A DNA stretch of 64,000 nucleotides. It comes from Antechinus flavipes. Its lineage: Eukaryota. Under the pieces are notes generated by a model. The model made no database searches. It was not told the DNA's origin and was given only the letters and a program-made list of their open reading frames with translations. This document shows positions 21,030 to 55,500 of the stretch, piece after piece; positions within the stretch are counted from its first letter, which is position 1; the number at the start of each line of letters is the position of its first letter. The position numbers were made by a program, and so were the translations under genes. The DNA lies in assembly GCF_016432865.1 (NCBI RefSeq), contig NC_067403.1, positions 241,180,001 through 241,244,000 on the forward strand, read 5' to 3'.

Positions 21030-24000
21030 CTGGGGATGGAGAAAGGAGAGCGTCAGGAAAGGAGGAGGGCCTGGGCCGGCTGGATGGCAGAGTGGTCCTG
21101 GGCTCACCTGTGTCCGCCAGGCTGCCCGTCACCTGGCACTCCCGGTCCCAGTCCTCGGGCACGAGGGGCAGAGTGAGGCGCAAGAAGTCTGGGAGGGGGC
21201 AGCTCTGGGAGCACCCGGGCAGGGCCAGGGGCCAGGGAGCTTCGGCGCTGTCGTTCCGGAAGTACATCTCCACCGAGAAGTTCCTGGGGGCGGCAGGAAA
21301 GCTGAGCCTGCGTGCTGGGGTCCCGCCCCCACCTCTGCCCAGGGGAAGCCACCCCAACTCACCCATCATCTTCCTGGTAAAGTTCGAACATGTGGCAGGA
21401 GGCGTAGGGAGCCTGCTCGCCATTGTAGACGTCCAGGGCCATCTGCAGGGCCACCAGCGTGGTGTCGTGCTGCAACGAGAGAGCCGCCACGTCCCTGCCG
21501 GCCCCAGGGCCCTTCCCTCCGCGTCCCTGCTGCCCACCCAGGGACTGGGGAGGCCGGGGGTGCGTGGCCGCGACTCACCGCTGAATAGACCAGCAGCTTC
21601 GGATGCTGGGCGGCCGAGGATGCCCACGTCAGGTTCTTCCGGATCTCGGCCAGGAGGACCCCTGAAGGAAATGGGGGAGACGTTGGGGGGCCGGTGGCAG
21701 CTGTCCGAGCATCCTCCTCCTCACCCCATGGAAGAGCTTCATCTGGAGCTCATGATCTCAGGAGGCAAAACGGACTTCAGGGTGACCACCAGCCCAACTC
21801 AGAGTCCCTGAGAACCGTCAGAACCAGGGCCCGCCCTCCCAGGGCGTCCTGCCAGCTGTCTGGGATAATCGAAGGCTCTGAGGGAGGCTGGTGGCCCAGT
21901 GGAGCTGACTCCACTCATCTTTCAGATTCGGCCTCAGACTCTTACTAGGGACCCCGGGCAAGCCATTTCACCCTGTTTGCCTCAGTTTTCTTATCAGCAA
22001 AATGAAGTGGAGAAGGTGAGGGCAAAGATCCCCAGTGACTGCTGAGAAACCGCCAAGGGGGTCAGGCGGGCAGCGGAAAGGCAGAAGTGACTCTAACTAG
22101 GGAGCTCTCCAGAGAACAACATGGGCGGGAAAGATCAGCCGCTGGCCTGGGGAAGATGGGACTCATGGAGGGCTCTGGCAGAGCCGGGTGGTGGCGGATG
22201 GAGTCTAGTCACAGACACCTGAAACACCGGGGGCACTCTGGGGGCTCTGAGCGGGGAGCAGCGGACCGCCCTTGTCACTCACCCCCCTGGAGCCGGGCCT
22301 TCTCTGTGGGCCGGTACATCCCAAAAAGGAATCGGAAGCTGAGGTCCTTGAGCTGCCGAAGGCGCTGCATGGTCTGGGGCGAGGCCCAGGGTGGCAGGGG
22401 CAGTTTGTGGGTTTGCTGTACAATGTATGGGCAGCTTAGTGTCAGGAAGGCTGGGGGGCCCAGAGCTCCCCAAGTGGCAAATGCTTGTGTGTGCAAGTGC
22501 CCTCGGGAGGGTGCGAGGGAAGGGGAAGAGAGGAGGTGGGGGGCCCAGGGGTTGCCAGCATGTCTGGGAAGGGGGCAGACAAAGAGAGGAAGGCTCCCTG
22601 GGCCTTCTGAGTCAGCAGAATGAGTCCTGGAGAAGTGCTGACGGTTAGGAAACCATTTCCCATGCTGGGGCTCTCCCGCGGCCCTGGGAGGGGAAGCTCC
22701 CCTCAGATGACTCAGCCCTGGATGGGAGGTCCTCCCCTGGCCCCAGCACCTGGCCTGAAGGGTCCCGAGGGGGAGAGGGGGGGTTCGCGGCCCGCACCTC
22801 ACAGAAGAGAGTGTCATAGATGTTCCAGGCCGTCTCCAGCGTCAGGTCGGGGACTCCCGTCTCATTAGCCACCATCTCCAGAAACAGCTGTGAAGGCAAA
22901 CCAGCCGTGGTAACGAGCCCGTTTCCTGCGGGCTCTGCGTCCTGCCCCGATCCCCCCGGCCCCCCACTTACAGCATTGCGGGCGGTTTCATTTTGGTATT
23001 CGGGGGTCTGGCGAGTCTCATTCTGTAGCTGCTCGAACCGAGGACACGGGCCCAGGGGGAACTTGAGCAGCTGTGGCCAGAAAGAGCCGGGCAAAAGGAT
23101 CAGTGATTGGTGAGCCCCGGAGGAGGGCGCCCAGGGGAGGAGGGCCGCCCGCCTCACCTTGTCCTGGGCCTCCGGGACCGTGTGCACAGGGATGGGCTGC
23201 CACGTGATGTTCGGATGGAAGGCCTGCGCCCCCTCCACCGGGAAGAGTCCGGCCAGGTTGGCCTCGGCACTCATGAGGGTGCGGTCAAAGTCTGTGCTCC
23301 GGATGTAAACCTGCGGGAGACAAGTGGGCCAACCTCGGCCGGGCGGCCCGGGCCTCCCAGGACAGAGAGATGGCAAAGAGCGGGGCCTCCCGGCGATCCG
23401 GGGCCTCCCAGGACAGAGAGATGGCAAAGAGCGGGGCCTCCCGGCGATCCGGGGCCTCCCAGGACAGAGAGATGGCAAAGAGCGGGGCTTCCCGGCGATC
23501 CGGGACCTCCCAGGACAGAGAGAGAGCAGGGCCTCCCAGGACAGCGAGATGGCAAAGAGCAGGGCCTCCCAGTGGTCCGGGGTCTCCCAGGACAGAGAGA
23601 GAGCGCGGGACCTCCCAGGACAGAGAGATGGCAAAGAGCGGGGCCTCCCAGTGGTCCAGGGTCTCCCAGGACAGAGAGAGAGAGCAGGACCTCCCAGGAC
23701 AGAAAGAGCGGGGCCTCCCAGGACAGAGAGAGAGAGCAGGGCCTCCCAGGACAGTGAGATGGCAAAGAGCGGGGCCTCCCAGGGCCTCCTAGCAGCCCGA
23801 GCCTGGGCCCGGGGCAGTGAGACAGGAGAACCTGCCGTCCTCGCAGCCCAGGGACAACTGCACCCACGCTTCTAGGACAGCTCCAGCCCAGCTGGTTCAC
23901 TTAGCCGCAAGTCCCAACCACCAGCTGGGCCAGGGCGTGGGGGGAGGAGCCCTCGGGAGGGCCACTCAGGTGGATCTGGGGCCTGCAGGCAGATGTCTCT

Positions 24001-29629: not shown

Positions 29630-29930
29630 TAAAATGCATCTATGTATGCATTCTCAAACATACAAGCCCATGCATTCATATGTATAAACATATATGGATG
29701 CAGCACACATTGAGATGGCAGAAAATACCTAGGCACCCGGCAGGTGAGTACGTACACTGTGAGCATACATACGTGTGCAAACACACACATGTAATATCCA
29801 TGCAGGGGTGGATATACCCCAAGTATACAAATACATGTGTATGTATACACGCAAACATGCATATGTGTGTGTGCTCACACATAAATGTATGTATGCATAT
29901 GTATACAAATATTCTGATGGCAAATGTGAG

Positions 29931-29967
<37 letters not shown>

Positions 29968-30000
29968 CACACACACACACATACATACATACATGTCCCA
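29630..30000. repeat. TA/CA/TG low-complexity tract with a (GT)n core
   Basis: Read directly. Confidence 0.9.
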
Positions 30001-32499
30001 CAATGCACGCCGAAGTGGGAGATGGAAGGTCAAGTCAAGAAAACATCAAATAGGTCATTTTGTTTATATTTACTCATATCATCTCTCTTATAGAATGTAA
30101 TCTCAATGAGGACAGGCCCTGTTCCACTTTGTCTTTGCGTTTCCGGTGCTGTGGGAGGCTCTTAGTCAATGTGCACCGATTGGTTGGGAGGTCCATTGTG
30201 AAGCTGGGAAGCCCTGATATATGAAGGTTAAGGGCAAAAAGCAGTTTGATGAGTGGGGAAAGGAGGCAGGAAGAGTTTGGTTTGTATTCTCTTCCTTCCC
30301 ATATATTGATTTTGGGCAAATCACGAAGCTCTTGGGGCTCCAGTGGTAGCTGCAGTCTGTGGAAGGCGCTTCCCCCCCCCCCCTCCAAATCAGTGAAATC
30401 ACAATTGTGGACTAAGATCTAGGCCGAGTGAAAGGCCTTCCCCAAATGTAAGGCCATGATGACTATTCCCATTCTAACTGGTGCTCCAGAGCGGGCCTAG
30501 GGAGCAGGGAGCCTGGAATGGAGCCTCATGGAACTGCACAGCTGGGGCGGGCTGGAGGTGGCGGAGCCTCGAAGGGGCTGAGAATCCTAAGAGGAAGAAA
30601 GTCGTAAGGGCCGAGACTCAATGTCTACAAGTAGCTAGGAATGAATGCCCCCTCCCCCCCCCACCCCATACCAGCCACTGGGGATGAAAAATAAAACAGA
30701 AACGTGGCTTCCTCTGGGAAATTACATTCTCACAGAGACGACAGGATGGAAACCTCTCCTTTTACAGATGAGAAAACCAAGGACAAAGAGAAGACGTGGC
30801 CTGTACAATTCAGAATACTTGTCTCCCATCCTCTACCAGCTAACTTAATCCGTATTCATCCTCCAACCGATTTTGTTCAGCATCCTACAGTGTCTAAGGC
30901 CATTGCCTCCGTGCCTCGATGGATCAGTGTTTGAAAACGTTTCCTCTCCAGGGGCGGAGGTTACCTAGGAGTTCATAAAGCGGAAGCACTCTTAAGTCAC
31001 TTTTGGGCCCAAATCCATGAGCAGCCGGAGAGCAATTCCTCCATTCTTATCCCACCCAGCCAGACAATTCGATACTTTCATGGGAACTTCTGAAATGGAT
31101 ATTCCTTCTATCCTGCAGATCCATAAAGTGGGGAACTGCCAAGGGAACACGACTGTTTGCTGACTTGTCCAGTCTGATAACTAATGTTGACGTGGGAACT
31201 TAGGTCTTGGGAGTCCTAGTCCAGGCCTTTATCCCCCACCCACAACAGGCCCTGGGGATCCAAAGGTGAGCATGTAAGTGATGGAGAATTTGCTTACATT
31301 TTAATAATGGGCTGTAGAAGCCAAACCCATAAATAAAAACATATAACCATTAGGGGAACTGGGAAAGATGGTTTAGGGGAAGTGTTCCTTGAGCCTTGGA
31401 GGAAGCTAAGGATTCTGGGAAGGGGAGGGGAAGGGAGAGGCCCCTCTGGGTTAGGAAGACACCCAGCAAAGATCAACAGGTGGGAGATGAAAGGGTTAGG
31501 GTTAGGAAATATCATTTGGGTTGTAACATGGAGAGTGTGAAGGGGAGCAATGTTGAATGATTGGAAAGTTAGGTTGGAGAGAGTAATTGTGGGAGAGATG
31601 GATAAAAGTGCTGGTTTTGGAGGCTCCGCTGCCCCTGCTCAGTGTGACCCTGAATAAATCACCTAATCTCTGCTCCAGATAGTTCTGAGATTGAAAAATG
31701 GCACAGAAGTAACTGGCTGAGGGAGTTCCTTCACGCCCAGGAAGGGAAGTGGGGGTGAGGAGAAGAGGACAAAAGAAATCGGGACTGGAACCTGACAGTG
31801 GGGAGCTTTACATGCTCGATAAAACTGTTGCGGCCAGAACTGATCTAACTGCTGCAAGGAGTTCGTTCCTACTTAGTGAAATCCTGCGGGGCAGGAACAG
31901 GCTTTCGTACTTTCGTTTGCATACTTATCCCTAACCTCCAGGGCTGTGCTTTAAAGGGCAAATTACATTATCTCCTTCACTCCTCGCAATTACCCCGAGG
32001 AGGGTTATTATCCCATTTTAGGGACGTGGAAATTGAGTTGAGAAATCAAGGAACACCTTCTGGACTGTCGTGAAGATCCAATGAGATGATATTTGTAGTA
32101 TTTAGCACAACGGCTGACACATAGTAGCTCTATTCAAATGGTAGTTATTTTTGTTATTGTTATTGCCAGTGTCACACACTGGAACGTGCGTTCCGGTCAG
32201 AATTCGAACTCACATCTTTATGATTCCGAGTTTTGCACCCAGCGGGCTGCCTCAAAGTAGTCTTTAATAGCACCTCAGGGTTTTCCTCCCTCTTCAGCTC
32301 ACCTAGGCTCACAACTACCCTTCCAGGTAGGGGCTGCCCATAGTCTTCATCTATATTCCTATTTTTATCGATGAATAAACTGAGGCTCGACAGTTTCAGC
32401 GGTTTAACCCAGCTGGTAAAAGCTCAGCTCGGGGCTCCGAGGCAGGACTTCCTAACTCCGAGCCCAGCTCTGAGTCGCCATTTCTAGAGCGCTTTGGAA

Positions 32500-46100: not shown

Positions 46101-47014
46101 CCGAAGGGGCCGGAAGCAGGAACCAGGGGCTTTGGAGATGAGGGGATGTGGTTGAAGCAGGGGAAGCTGTGTGGGCGCAGGCTTTAGGGGAGGGGTCCTC
46201 GCCAAGACCCCACAGAGGAGGGGCTGTCACTGCCCCTCTTGGGGACCTGGGGCCCCCACGAAGGAGACCTGACACACACACACCCCTTCCCCGGGAGAAG
46301 GCCCCGCAGTGGCCAGGCCCGGGCCCCGGGGCTTGGGAGAGGAAGCCACAAGCAGGGCATCTTTCAGCCAATCTGACCCTTCAAAGGAGGGCGCTTATTT
46401 ATTTCCGGCCCTCCCCAGCCTGTTTCTGGGCTTCCTTCCCTGTGCCCCTCTCCATTTAGGCCCGATGGTCGGGTTCAGTTCTGTAGTGTTACCCCAGCCT
46501 CTGTGGGGGACAGAGGGGCTCCCAGCCGGCTGCTGTCTGCCCCCCTCTCCCCCACGGAACTGTCTGGGCCTTGGGTCGGATTGTGCAGGAGACAGGCCTT
46601 AATGACAGGATCCAGAGGGGGACAGTGTGGATGCTGAAGGCCCTGGCTAACTTCATTGGCTGTGACAAGGAGAAGAGAGGACCCTAGAGTGGGGGAGGAT
46701 GTCATATCGTGGGCTCCGGGCCATTGGACACAGCTTGAGCCATTTGGTCACCAGGGAGGGAGGGGCATCGACTGCACTATAAATAGTTCTGGGAGCTGGA
46801 GTTGCTATGGAGACAGAACTGAATCCTATTACCTGGAGGTCCTGCTGTCCTGTGTTTGTAGGGGGTTAGAGGAGGGCCAGAAGAAGCCTGGGGGTGAGGT
46901 GCAGGAAGAGGAGAGGCGGAGGGGAGTATGCTGTTTTGTAGAGAGACTACCAGCAGGGCCCCGAGAATGTAGTAAGCTTATGTGTCTGTGTGCCTGTGCA
47001 GGCAGTGACCAGGG

Positions 47015-47015
<1 letters not shown>

Positions 47016-47056
<41 letters not shown>
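47016..47056. repeat. (GT)n microsatellite
   Basis: Read directly. Confidence 0.95.
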
Positions 47057-47057
<1 letters not shown>

Positions 47058-48236
47058 TGAGACAATCAGACAGAAAGAGAAACAGACAGAGACAGACAGA
47101 AACAGAGGAAGAGAATCAGCCTGTGTGTGTGTGCAAGCAGCAATCAGGGTGCGTGCATGCATGTGTGTGTGAGAGAGAGATGGAGATGGGAACCTTATCC
47201 ATGTGTGTAGAAAACAGGGTCTGCATGTGGGCTCGTGCAGAACTCTGTCGGGTTGTAAATCAGCCCTGGGAGGGGTTGTGGGAAGTGATGAGGCTGCTGG
47301 TTGGCATTATTCTCACTTAAGATTTCTTAAGGCTTAATTAACTTTGGATACACAGTTTAGTAATTCCGAGTCTCCCTTCCCTGCCCCTCCTGTTCCCTAC
47401 TTCCAGGGGATAGCAGATACTCTGTTAAGAAATCCCTCTTTCAGTTCCCAGTGTTTACAACACACAGTAGAAGGGAAAGATCCCATGATCTCCTCTGCTC
47501 TCTGCTGATCTTGACTTCAGTACAGGGTTCACAGGAGAAAATTCAGCACCAAGGGCAGAACTCTTGGCTGTGGCTCCTTGGCGCCAGCAGGCCTTCTAAT
47601 TTAAGGGCAAAAAGAGCAGAGACATTTTGGTTTTTAAACTTATGTTCTAACAGCTACGGCTGCTGCCCACCTAAATTAGTCTAAATAAATTTGAATTCAG
47701 GTGTTTTGGTTTTGATCTCGTTTAGGGGGTCAATGATTAGGCAGGCCTGGAAGTCTAGTTTGATGCAGAAACCCATTGAAACGGACCTAACATCCAGAGC
47801 TGCCCCCAAAGTGGGGGCAAGTGTCAAAAAGACAGAGGGTCCAACTGGACCTAGTCTGAAAGGGATCACTCCCTCCCCTATCCAGGTGGGGCCAAAAATA
47901 GACTAGCTTGAGGTGGGAGGGTGGGAGGGAGGGGGAGTATAATTTGTCCTGCATTACGATTGACTCATTCTCAGCTCATAAGCCAAAATAGAGTCCCGGC
48001 TGAGTGTTCTTTTCTCTCCCCGATTCTGCTGAGTTAGAGGACATGATGACTTGTTTTCTGATGTCCCTCTCTAAAGATGATGGATTTAAGGGAGGGCTAA
48101 TCACCTACATACAACAACAGAGCTTCTCAGTACCTTTGTTCCTTTAGAGTGCCATCATCAACGATTTCCAGAATTCTCTCTGATGCCCTGTCAGCTGCCC
48201 TGAAGTTTCTCTGGGATGAGCAGGTGATTTGGAATC

Positions 48237-52504: not shown

Positions 52505-55500
52505 TGAGTAGGAGGAATTCCACAGATAAAGACAAGAAGGAATATCAGCTTACATTTAGGTAATGTTTTACAAAGCTTTTTGGCTGACCTTTATTTTTAT
52601 TTTTTTATTTCCTTTTTAAAAAATACACACAAAGATAGTTTTCAGCATTCCTTCTTGTAAAACCATGTGTTCCATATTTTTCTCCCTACCTCCTCCCTCC
52701 CCTAGGCAGTAAGCCATCCAAAATAGGTTAAACATGTGCAATTATTCTAAGCTTATTTCCACACTTATCTTTTGGCTGATCTCTAAATCACCCTGGTGAA
52801 GCAGAAGGCATCATTTTCCCCACTTTCCACACTAGGAAACAGGGTCAGAGGCGAAGTGGCCTGCCCGTGGTCTCACACCTAGTCACTGTCAGGGTAGGAA
52901 TTTGAATCCTGCTGTTTTGGCCCCAGATGTCAGACTCTCTACTAATTGATCTTTTGGTAAGGAGCTTCCAAAAGAAGCTTTTGACACATTCTGAAACAGT
53001 CACTATGCTCTGCCTGTTATAGGTGATCGCACCAACTAATGCAGAGGTGTTGCCCGTCCTGCCAGAGCCCGAATCCTTAGAACTGAAAAAGCACTTGAAG
53101 CAGGTGAGTTGGGGGAGGACAAGGGAGGGTCTGCTGGAGGGGGACAGAGCTCCAGGAAACAACCTCCATCCTTAGGGCAGGAAATCAGTATCATCTTCAG
53201 TCTAGCTTCTCTTAGTGTCCTTCCTGTCCTGTGCATATGCTCTCCTGTCTAATATGCTCCTTACAAACAATCTGTTCTTGTTTCTCTGCTGTTTGCATGG
53301 CCTTGGAACTACTGCTGACTCAAGTCATGTGTAGGTCTGGATTTTGACTCGGTGAAATGCCTTCTCTCATAGACGCTTTTCATGGGGTCTTTTCCTCTTA
53401 AACGCCAGGTCTCTGTAGTGTCTTTCCTTCAGAAACTCCTTTCCTGGTTTGGTCCATTCCACCCATTTTTCATTGGTTTCTGTTCTTCCTCCTCCTACAC
53501 GCTGCATGCAGTACTTGAAGGTAACATGTGTGAATTCCCCGTCTTGAGCTTTGTTGTGCTTGTTCTCAGGGGCCATCCCCAGGAGGCCGTGCTTCTCACG
53601 CAGCTCTTCATAACTCCCCTCCCCTTCCTTGTGTTAGCTGAGGCATTTGGTGGTAGTTCTCAGTGATAGCAGTGTCGTTTTAAATGGGTCACCCTATATC
53701 CTCCATCGCTTTTCCCCCGTTTCCCTGCTGGTGACGTTATATGATCTGCCCTTTGTCGCAGGGGCCAGTGAAGGTGAGTGCAAGGCGTGCTCCAGCAGTT
53801 TTCTCCTGATGTTTCTTCACCACTGGTGACTTTTTAGCAGGCATCACGAGGGAGAAATTAAGAAAGAGGGATACGAAAATAAGTATGTTCAAATATTGAT
53901 GGAAGCCAGAGCTAGCCTTATCCCATGGGGGCTCATTGAGATTTCAGCTTTGGTGATTATAGATGACTTAATTAGGAATCTCTGTACTCTTAGAAGAGGT
54001 GTCTGTATGATGGATTATCTTCCACATATTTTGATTTATATTTCAGGACAGAGATTTTTGGGTTAGTTGGGTCACAAATGTATCGTCTGTAGTTTGTGAG
54101 GACAGTCCTCTCCACAAGCCTCTACTAACCCAGGCTAGAATAAAAGACAGAGACACTGATTCTGAAGAGGCCCTTTCCCAGTCGAAAACTGTTTATTTCC
54201 CAGGATTCTCTCCGTGATAAAATGCCTTTTATTCCACAGGCACTGGCCAGCATGAGTCTGAATACTCAGCCTATCCTCAACTTGGAGAAGTTCCATGAGG
54301 GCCAAGAGATCCCACTACTCTTGGGAAGACCACCCAGTGATTTGCAATCCACACCTTCCACTGAATTCAATCCCCTCATCTATGGCAATGATGTAGATTC
54401 AGTGGATGTGGCTACCAGGTGAGATCAAGCAGGCCTGTATGGGGAAGAGTTCTTGAACTGGGTCTCCTTCGTGCTTTAGACAAACTTGGAGCCTGGGTAT
54501 TTTTAATATGTAAAATTGGAATTATAATATTGGCTTTTACCTGCTCACTTTAAAGTTTCTTATTGCCAAGATAAGAAGAAATAGTTTAAAAAAAAAAAGG
54601 AAGTGGTTTGGAATAGCAGATAGGTTATCACCAGACCTTTTAGGTACATCAGAGCACATAGTGTGCATGTTCAAAATACATGCAAAGGTAGCATCTACCC
54701 TTGCAAAATTTTGTGTTACAAATTTTTCTCTCTTCTTTCCCTCTCCTTCCTCCTCTAAACTGCAAATAATCTTTTCTTTTCTTTTCTTTTCTTTTTTGTA
54801 TTATTATAGTTTTTTATTGACAGAACATATGCATGGGTAATTTTTCAACATGGATCCTTGCAATCACTTCTGTTCCAGCTTTTCCCTTCCTTCTCTCAAG
54901 CCCCACCTCCCCTAGATGGCAGGCAGTCTCATACATGTTAAATATGTTAAAGTATATCTTAAATACAATATATGTGTATATATTTATACAGTTCTCTTGT
55001 TGCACGAGAAAAATCGGATTTAAAAAGGTAAAAACCTGGAAAGAAAAACAAAAATGCAAGCATAGACTGCAAATAATCTAATATAGGTTACACATGTGTA
55101 ATTCTCCTAAATATATTTCCATATTTCTCATGCTGTACCAAAAAAAAATCAGATCAAAAGGGGAAAAAAATGAGGAAGAAAAAGAAACAACAAAGATAAA
55201 AATACTGTGTTGTGATCCATATTCAGTCTCCATAGTCCTCTCCCCAGATGCGAATGGTTCTTTCCATCACAAATCTATTCATCTGAGCACTTATTAAGAG
55301 CTGCTATATGCTAATATTGTGCTGGATGCTGAGGGCACAAAGATAGAATGTAGCACCATTCTTGCTGCCAGGAAGATATCCTAAGGGAGACACATCATAG
55401 CCTCCCTTAAGCACAGTGGGCCAGGCAGGGAGCAAGGATTGTGGGGCAAAGGGGAGATCCAGATTAGACACAGTGCTCAGGACCATCTGAGGAAGGAGAA

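What the first reader, a model, noticed from the sequence alone, without database searches (positions are those of the whole stretch)
53470..53526. Candidate 9-nt frame-preserving microexon (YLK) in MADD with a UGCAUG at its 3' splice site
Seen: the intron between the 81-nt exon (...KKHLKQ, ends 53103) and ALASMS (54240) is phase 0. Inside it a long pyrimidine tract leads to GCTGCATGCAG|TACTTGAAG|GTAACA, which would insert Y-L-K with no stop or frameshift. TGCATG (53503-53508) is the Rbfox motif, and two UGCs sit within 10 nt of the AG. The 9-mer differs by one base from CACTTGAAG near the end of the preceding exon, which hints at origin by duplication. Known: UGC just upstream of a 3-27 nt exon is the SRRM4/SRRM3 neural-microexon signature, and MADD is a neuronal/endocrine Rab3/Rab27 GEF. 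Inference: a tissue-regulated insertion within the DENN module that is absent from the canonical human protein as I recall it.
Basis: partly seen in the sequence, partly recalled or inferred. Interest (0 to 1): 0.75.

Follow-up and report, generated by a model that had tools for sequence, protein, structure and literature searches.

The report
Unproven 9-base MADD microexon candidate
A 9-base, frame-keeping stretch with splice-like signals really does sit in an intron of the marsupial MADD gene, but no annotated transcript in ten marsupials uses it and no RNA or cross-species DNA could be checked, so it is most likely an unused look-alike.

Summary
A 19/20 pyrimidine run is followed by two UGC, one inside UGCAUG, then CAG, a 9-nt open stretch (Y-L-K) and GTAACA. 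All of this lies in the phase-0 intron between the 81-nt and 179-nt MADD exons.

The layout matches the published pattern for SRRM3/4-dependent microexons, except that the donor is only moderate. A composite signature set at the candidate's own values is rare: 1 hit in 128 kb, and 0.4% of shuffled introns. It is still within what a wide scan finds by chance.

It is not the known, deeply conserved 9-nt MADD microexon. That one encodes ERK near the C-terminus and lies outside the window.

All 58 marsupial isoforms seen (10 species, three of them dasyurids), 14 echidna isoforms and about 160 placental isoforms read KKHLKQ|ALASMS with no insert. Nine of the marsupial isoforms do carry ERK.

The decisive tests could not be run.

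Verdict: most likely an unused pseudo-microexon (about 0.65). A real regulated microexon remains possible (about 0.15). The scan had already noted the neighbouring 12-nt candidate (s1-192103) on this same window.

The parts
53023..53103 (+). Upstream constitutive 81-nt MADD exon (VIAPTNAEV...KKHLKQ), donor CAG|GTGAGT
   Evidence: Searches give the translation. One search shows that Antechinus MADD residues 404-431 map here. The donor score is 12.5.
53472..53472 (+). Best-guess branch-point A (TTCAT, yUnAy-like), about 40 nt upstream of the candidate AG, with no AG in between
   Evidence: Read directly. This is inferred and not tested.
53477..53496 (+). Polypyrimidine tract, 19 of 20 C/T, at -35..-16 of the candidate exon
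   Evidence: One search gives a best 20-mer pyrimidine fraction of 0.95.
53503..53509 (+). UGCAUGC: two UGC (at -9..-7 and -5..-3) and one UGCAUG (Rbfox-type hexamer) lying between the pyrimidine tract and the AG
53510..53511 (+). Candidate acceptor AG, preceded by C (CAG)
   Evidence: The proximal acceptor score is only 0.49, against 4.2-7.5 for most real MADD acceptors in the window.
53512..53520 (+). Candidate 9-nt exon TACTTGAAG = Y-L-K, in frame in a phase-0 intron, with no stop
   Evidence: It is the only composite-signature hit in 128 kb. It is not present in any annotated isoform seen.
53521..53526 (+). Candidate donor GTAACA (AAG|GTAACA), lacking +5G and +6U
   Evidence: Donor score 6.77. 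Real MADD donors in the window score 3.2, 6.8, 8.6, 10.9, 11.2 and 12.5.
53762..53773 (+). Second in-frame candidate microexon, 12 nt (G-P-V-K), with CGCAG| and |GTGAGT. It is a neighbour and not part of this finding.
Evidence: acceptor 5.74, donor 12.33. It is also absent from all annotated isoforms seen.
54240..54418 (+). Downstream constitutive 179-nt MADD exon (ALASMS...VDVATR), donor CAG|GTGAGA

Best explanation
The stretch is most likely an unused pseudo-microexon. A pyrimidine-rich run is followed by the first AG downstream, and a GT lies nine bases later, all inside an ordinary 1136-nt MADD intron.

In this reading the spliceosome removes the intron in one step, from 53104 to 54239. 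Three things make that the expected outcome. A 9-nt exon cannot be defined across the exon. Its donor pairs with U1 over only about six contiguous positions (-2 to +4). Its acceptor has no pyrimidines in the last 15 nt and is partly covered by a UGCAUG site.

Shown: the letters, the frame, the moderate or weak splice-site scores, and the absence from all annotated isoforms seen. Inferred: that it is not spliced in.

If it is used at all, the only plausible route is SRRM3/4 (eMIC)-assisted recognition through the two UGC in neurons or endocrine cells. That would add Y-L-K inside the predicted helix that joins the DENN and dDENN parts.
For: Annotation:
- Every full-length MADD isoform retrieved reads KKHLKQ|ALASMS with exactly 87 residues between the flanking exons.
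- This covers 58 marsupial isoforms from 10 species (Antechinus, Sarcophilus and Sminthopsis among them), 14 echidna isoforms and about 160 placental isoforms.
- The longest (X1) models of Dromiciops and Macrotis lack any insert.
- Positive control: the known 9-nt ERK microexon is annotated in 9 of those marsupial isoforms, including a dasyurid, and in 6 echidna isoforms.

Splice signals:
- The donor score of 6.77 sits in the lower half of the real MADD donors in the window.
- The acceptor score of 0.49 is below every real acceptor scored, whose weakest are 1.0-1.5.

Chance:
- The composite signature implies about 0.5 chance sites per 64-kb window on both strands, so a wide scan is expected to turn up such sites.

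Other checks:
- The literature retrieved names one MADD microexon, and it lies elsewhere in the gene.
- There is no extended duplication, repeat family, Rfam match or unusual RNA fold at the site.
Against: - The combination of pyrimidine tract, two UGC, CAG, 9 nt and GTAA is unique in 128 kb and arises in only 0.4% of shuffled introns.
- It matches the published architecture of SRRM3/4 targets. UGC lies between the branch point and the AG in 74-79% of them, together with a long branch-point-to-AG distance.
- MADD is a neuronal/endocrine gene with a proven neural microexon.
- The 9-mer repeats the in-frame HLK codons of the preceding exon at 8/9 bases (0.7% of comparable sites).
- Gene-prediction pipelines detect new 9-nt exons poorly. 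Clustering at 90% identity also hides small-insert isoforms: only 15 of 248 members of the main marsupial cluster were seen. The annotation evidence is therefore weak.
Confidence: 0.65

Rival explanations
1. It is a real, tissue-regulated 9-nt microexon. In neurons or endocrine cells, SRRM4/SRRM3 bind the UGC between the displaced pyrimidine tract and the AG and help early spliceosome assembly. The exon is then included, adding Y-L-K after KKHLKQ in the helix between DENN and dDENN. It would be marsupial- or dasyurid-specific.
For: - The cis layout fits the published SRRM3/4 code.
- It is frame-preserving with no stop.
- The host gene already has a conserved SRRM3/4-regulated 9-nt microexon elsewhere.
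- A second in-frame candidate with strong sites lies 241 nt downstream.
- The junction lies in a predicted helix, residues 420-433 (low confidence). By my own inspection Y-L-K would keep Leu at the same helical position.
Against: - There is no RNA evidence.
- It is absent from all 58 marsupial isoforms seen, while ERK is annotated.
- The donor is only moderate, whereas strong donors are described as typical of microexons.
- UGCAUG sits on the acceptor, which from general knowledge is a repressive position for Rbfox.
- Conservation is untested.
Confidence: 0.15
2. The pyrimidine tract and UGCAUG form an intronic splicing-regulatory element, for example a PTBP- or Rbfox-binding site. It would tune the use of neighbouring exons, such as the 12-nt candidate downstream or the 81-nt exon upstream, and the AG..GT pair itself would be incidental.
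For: A CU-rich tract with UCUU and CCU repeats and a perfect UGCAUG lie 400 nt downstream of the 81-nt exon and 250 nt upstream of the 12-nt candidate. From general knowledge, Rbfox sites downstream of an exon enhance its inclusion and sites upstream repress it.
Against: The 81-nt exon is constitutive in every isoform seen. The 12-nt exon is itself unproven. A single hexamer and a pyrimidine run are common in introns. No binding or conservation data exist.
Confidence: 0.12
3. It is the marsupial copy of the known, bilaterian-old 9-nt MADD neural microexon.
For: It is in the same gene and has the same length.
Against: The known exon's downstream RT-PCR primer encodes LNHIKKC. Annotated isoforms differ by ERK between FMH(N/S)Q and VFIELNHIKKC near the C-terminus. 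Those flanks are not in the window.
Confidence: 0.01

Closest known systems
SRRM3/SRRM4 (eMIC)-dependent neural and endocrine microexons
   Same: The length is 3-27 nt and frame-preserving. UGC lies between the end of the pyrimidine tract and the AG. The inferred branch-point-to-AG distance is long. The host gene is a neuronal vesicle-traffic GEF.
   Different: The donor is only moderate (AAG|GTAACA). UGCAUG overlaps the acceptor. There is no RNA, conservation or annotation support, whereas typical members are highly conserved with conserved flanking introns.
The known MADD 9-nt neural microexon (zebrafish VastDB DreEX0044304; encodes ERK in mammals)
   Same: Same gene, same 9-nt length, and in frame.
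   Different: It lies near the C-terminus, between FMH(N/S)Q and VFIELNHIKKC, and outside this window. It is reported as bilaterian-ancestral and SRRM3/4-regulated. It is annotated in marsupials and echidna, whereas the candidate here is in no annotation.
Intronic pseudo-exons (unused AG..GT pairs with plausible splice-site scores)
   Same: It sits inside an ordinary intron, has moderate or weak site scores, and has no transcript support.
   Different: Its composite signature is rarer than that of the average pseudo-exon (0.4% of shuffled introns). It is also in frame and stop-free.
Neighbouring 12-nt MADD candidate microexon
   Same: It is in the same phase-0 intron, is in frame, has a UGC upstream, and is absent from all annotated isoforms seen.
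   Different: The 12-nt candidate has much stronger sites (acceptor 5.7, donor 12.3, against 0.5 and 6.8).

Membership tests
SRRM3/4-dependent microexon | Exon of 3-27 nt, usually a multiple of 3 and open in frame | tested here: met
   The candidate is 9 nt, encodes Y-L-K, lies in a phase-0 intron and has no stop.
SRRM3/4-dependent microexon | UGC motif between the branch point or pyrimidine tract and the AG (74-79% of members) | tested here: met
   UGC is at -9..-7 and -5..-3, downstream of the pyrimidine tract at -35..-16.
SRRM3/4-dependent microexon | Long branch-point-to-AG distance with an extended pyrimidine tract | tested here: inconclusive
   The pyrimidine tract is 19/20. The best yUnAy sits about 40 nt upstream with no intervening AG. 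The branch point is only inferred from sequence.
SRRM3/4-dependent microexon | Strong 5' splice site | tested here: inconclusive
   The donor is AAG|GTAACA with a score of 6.77. Most neighbouring real donors score 8.6-12.5, although 3.2 and 6.8 also occur. The scoring matrix was typed from textbook frequencies and is approximate.
SRRM3/4-dependent microexon | Inclusion seen in RNA, enriched in neural or endocrine tissue | not testable with these tools
SRRM3/4-dependent microexon | Conservation of the exon and flanking intron across species | not testable with these tools
   NCBI marsupial files are too large to be served. ORFs from the window are not on record. The contigs that could be reached, L001-L006, do not align with this intron and are most likely placental.
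SRRM3/4-dependent microexon | Presence in annotated or predicted isoforms of the species or its relatives | tested here: not met
   None of 58 marsupial isoforms has an insert at KQ|ALASMS, while ERK is annotated in 9 of them. The caveat is cluster sampling.
Known MADD 9-nt (ERK) microexon | Position between FMH(N/S)Q and VFIELNHIKKC | tested here: not met
   The candidate lies between KKHLKQ and ALASMS. The ERK flanks are absent from the window.
Rbfox-activated exon | (U)GCAUG in the downstream intron | tested here: not met
   The only UGCAUG near the candidate is upstream and overlaps the acceptor at 53503-08. From general knowledge this position predicts repression.

The most novel reading that the evidence does not exclude
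A marsupial- or dasyurid-specific, SRRM3/4-dependent 9-nt microexon that lengthens the helix joining the DENN and dDENN parts of the Rab3/Rab27 exchange factor MADD by Y-L-K. It may have been born from a short copy of the preceding exon's last codons. Together with the 12-nt neighbour it would form a lineage-specific tandem microexon pair in one intron.
Probability: 0.13. Interest if true: 0.5.

Novelty: not a real feature. Interest (0 to 1): 0.22.

Why it matters
If it were real, it would be a young, lineage-specific neural microexon inside the catalytic DENN module of MADD. Most known microexons are ancient, so it would offer a case of how new ones are born, here next to a second candidate in the same intron. 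As it stands it mainly illustrates a limit of motif evidence. A convincing microexon-type signature can arise at about the rate a wide scan will encounter by chance, and motif evidence alone does not establish use.

Tried and rejected
No read evidence was obtained.

2. Cross-species DNA.
- Longest-isoform look-ups for Macrotis and Trichosurus returned gene ranges but no DNA, because the files are too large.
- A non-longest Monodelphis isoform is not on record.
- Three window ORFs used as handles are not on record.
- ORF hits to the 179-nt exon gave Logan and ENA contigs L001-L006. Their introns do not align with the window, and they stop about 330 nt upstream of the exon or look placental.

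3. RNA-derived protein fragments spanning the junction. The 60-aa exon search found only genomic ORFs and none with the dasyurid sequence.

4. The idea that this is the known MADD 9-nt microexon was rejected.

5. Origin by duplication. Only a 10/11-base match was found, with no extended repeat.

6. Repeat or transposon origin. The intron has no other copy in the window.

7. Structured RNA. There is no Rfam match at E up to 1, and the fold z-score is 0.10.

8. Structure.
- No MADD structure has been solved. DENND1A and DENND1B align only up to the junction.
- The AlphaFold model of residues 1-620 from a 14-row alignment has mean pLDDT 34 and is too poor to use. It weakly predicts a helix at 420-433.

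Full report
**Setting**

The window carries DDB2, ACP2 (minus strand), NR1H3 and the 5' third of MADD on the plus strand. This gene order is read from the ORF translations. The first coding exons of MADD are identical to Antechinus flavipes MADD isoform X4, and the large second exon matches at 200 of 200 residues. The genome is therefore a dasyurid marsupial, Antechinus or a close relative.

**Observation**

- The 81-nt exon is 53023-53103 and ends KKHLKQ, with donor CAG|GTGAGT.
- The next exon is 54240-54418 (179 nt, ALASMS...VDVATR), so the 1136-nt intron is phase 0.
- Inside the intron, a 19/20 pyrimidine tract (53477-53496) is followed by ACACGC, UGCAUGC (53503-09, two UGC and one UGCAUG), AG (53510-11), TACTTGAAG (53512-20, Y-L-K) and GTAACA (53521-26).
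- The best branch-point-like motif (TTCAT, A at 53472) lies about 40 nt upstream. The candidate AG is the first AG after it. This is read and the branch point is inferred.

**Chance**

I scored splice sites with simple matrices built from textbook frequencies, so the values are approximate.
- The candidate scores 6.77 at the donor and 0.49 at the acceptor.
- The flanking real exons score 12.5 and 10.9 at their donors and 4.6 and 4.2 at their acceptors.
- The 12-nt neighbour scores 12.3 at the donor and 5.7 at the acceptor.
- Eleven multiple-of-3 AG..GT pairs at least as good occur in 128 kb of both strands.

A composite signature modelled on SRRM3/4 targets is much rarer.
- The candidate is the only hit in 128 kb.
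- Only 0.4% of 2000 dinucleotide shuffles of the intron produce a hit.
- The thresholds were set at the candidate's own values. The implied rate, about 0.004 per kb, means roughly half a site per window on both strands.
- The pattern is unusual for this one intron but expected somewhere in a wide scan.

The 8/9 in-frame identity with the HLK codons of the preceding exon is seen at 0.7% of comparable AG-N9-GT sites. The similarity stops at 10 of 11 bases, and the local alignment score is reached by 8.7% of shuffles. A duplication origin is neither shown nor excluded.

**Not the known MADD microexon**

The literature names a 9-nt MADD microexon.
- It is neural-specific, SRRM3/4-regulated and conserved between zebrafish and human (PMC12626424).
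- It is inferred to be bilaterian-ancestral (bioRxiv 10.64898/2026.09.05.749416).
- The downstream RT-PCR primer for it encodes LNHIKKC.

In the full-length proteins retrieved, that motif lies near the C-terminus. Isoforms differ there by ERK between FMH(N/S)Q and VFIELNHIKKC. Those flanks are not in the window. The candidate here is therefore a different site.

**Annotated isoforms**

An exon-by-exon search with the 179-nt exon (collected) gave a natural full-length MADD protein. Two word searches with natural proteins and one cluster listing then gave about 230 full-length isoforms. Every one has exactly 87 residues between DSNR and VAMVRFF, with KKHLKQ directly followed by ALASMS.

The set includes 58 marsupial isoforms from 10 species:
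- Monodelphis 6
- Gracilinanus 18
- Petaurus 15
- Antechinus 5
- Sarcophilus 1
- Sminthopsis 3
- Macrotis 2
- Dromiciops 6
- Notamacropus 1
- Trichosurus 1

It also includes 14 echidna isoforms. Neither Y-L-K nor the neighbour's G-P-V-K appears. As a positive control, the ERK microexon is annotated in 9 marsupial isoforms (Gracilinanus, Sarcophilus, Dromiciops) and 6 echidna isoforms.

This evidence is negative but weak, for three reasons.
- The searches list the best-scoring entries.
- The main marsupial cluster has 248 members, of which 15 were seen.
- From general knowledge, prediction pipelines find new 9-nt exons poorly, and ERK may be carried over from other species' proteins.

**Fit to the SRRM3/4 code**

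A mutagenesis study reports a UGC between branch point and AG in 74-79% of SRRM3/4-dependent microexons. The most relevant UGC lies between the end of the pyrimidine tract and the AG. The core architecture is a long branch-point-to-AG distance and a strong 5' splice site (10.1101/2024.09.17.613571). A second preprint reports extended, accessible branch-point-to-3'-splice-site regions (PMC12871342).

The candidate fits the UGC, pyrimidine-tract and distance features. It does not clearly fit the strong-donor feature.

**Other checks**
- The intron has no second copy in the window.
- There is no Rfam match.
- The RNA fold is unremarkable, with z = 0.10.
- No MADD structure has been solved. DENND1A and DENND1B align only up to the junction.
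- An AlphaFold model of residues 1-620 was too poor to use (mean pLDDT 34). It weakly places the junction inside a helix at 420-433.

**What could not be done**
No junction or cross-species read evidence exists.
- Later local databases had those places masked.
- The ORF-handle contigs that could be fetched (L001-L006) do not align with this intron.
- I did not fetch contigs for exon hits whose sequence is compatible with human (P0315, P0316, P0318).
The one window exon searched was sent by reference, and full-length queries were natural database proteins.

**Weighing**

My rough estimate, which is an inference, runs as follows.
- Genome-wide chance sites with this signature outnumber real microexons several-fold.
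- Enrichment for neuronal trafficking genes raises the odds to perhaps 10-20%.
- The weak negative annotation evidence lowers them slightly.
- I put a real, regulated microexon at about 0.15, an unused pseudo-exon at about 0.65, and an incidental part of an intronic regulatory element at about 0.12.

I did not test this. I only add that G-P-V-K is likewise absent from all isoforms seen.

Noticed in passing
window 53762-53773: A second in-frame candidate microexon (12 nt, G-P-V-K) has much stronger sites, CGCAG| and |GTGAGT (acceptor 5.7, donor 12.3). It is already covered by note s1-192103. It is also absent from all 58 marsupial isoforms seen.
   Followed up: partly
window 53559-53575 vs 53751-53767: A 17-nt direct repeat (82% identity, 192 nt apart) copies the acceptor and first six bases of the 12-nt candidate (CTTGTTCTCAG|GGGCCA against CTTTGTCGCAG|GGGCCA). 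This could be a small local duplication inside the intron.
   Followed up: no
outside the window (MADD C-terminal exons): The known bilaterian-old 9-nt MADD microexon encodes ERK between FMH(N/S)Q and VFIELNHIKKC. It is annotated in Gracilinanus, Sarcophilus, Dromiciops and echidna isoforms.
   Followed up: yes
window 1-64000: The gene order DDB2(+), ACP2(-), NR1H3(+), MADD(+) is read from the ORF translations. MADD exon 2 is 100% identical to Antechinus flavipes isoform X4, so the genome is a dasyurid.
   Followed up: partly
window about 23100-23900: ORFs on both strands show a peptide unit repeated several times (…[17 protein letters not shown]…). This suggests a minisatellite of roughly 50-nt period inside the ACP2 region.
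   Followed up: no
window about 29680-30090 and about 47000-47060: ORF translations made of HTHTHT and CVCVCV runs indicate (GT/CA)n microsatellites.
   Followed up: no
L003:590-870 and L004: In these Logan contigs, of an unidentified and probably placental species, the intron after the 179-nt exon is only about 280 nt. It is 4.17 kb in the window.
   Followed up: no
protein P0025: The protein library holds a spliced MADD fragment whose residues look C-to-T converted throughout (for example KKYLKQVLVSMS). It probably comes from a bisulfite-treated library. It shows the canonical junction.
   Followed up: no
window 53503-53531: In the minimum-free-energy fold, the GCAUG at the candidate acceptor pairs with CAUGU just after the candidate donor. 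This encloses the 9-nt stretch in a small hairpin. The fold is not better than shuffles.
   Followed up: no
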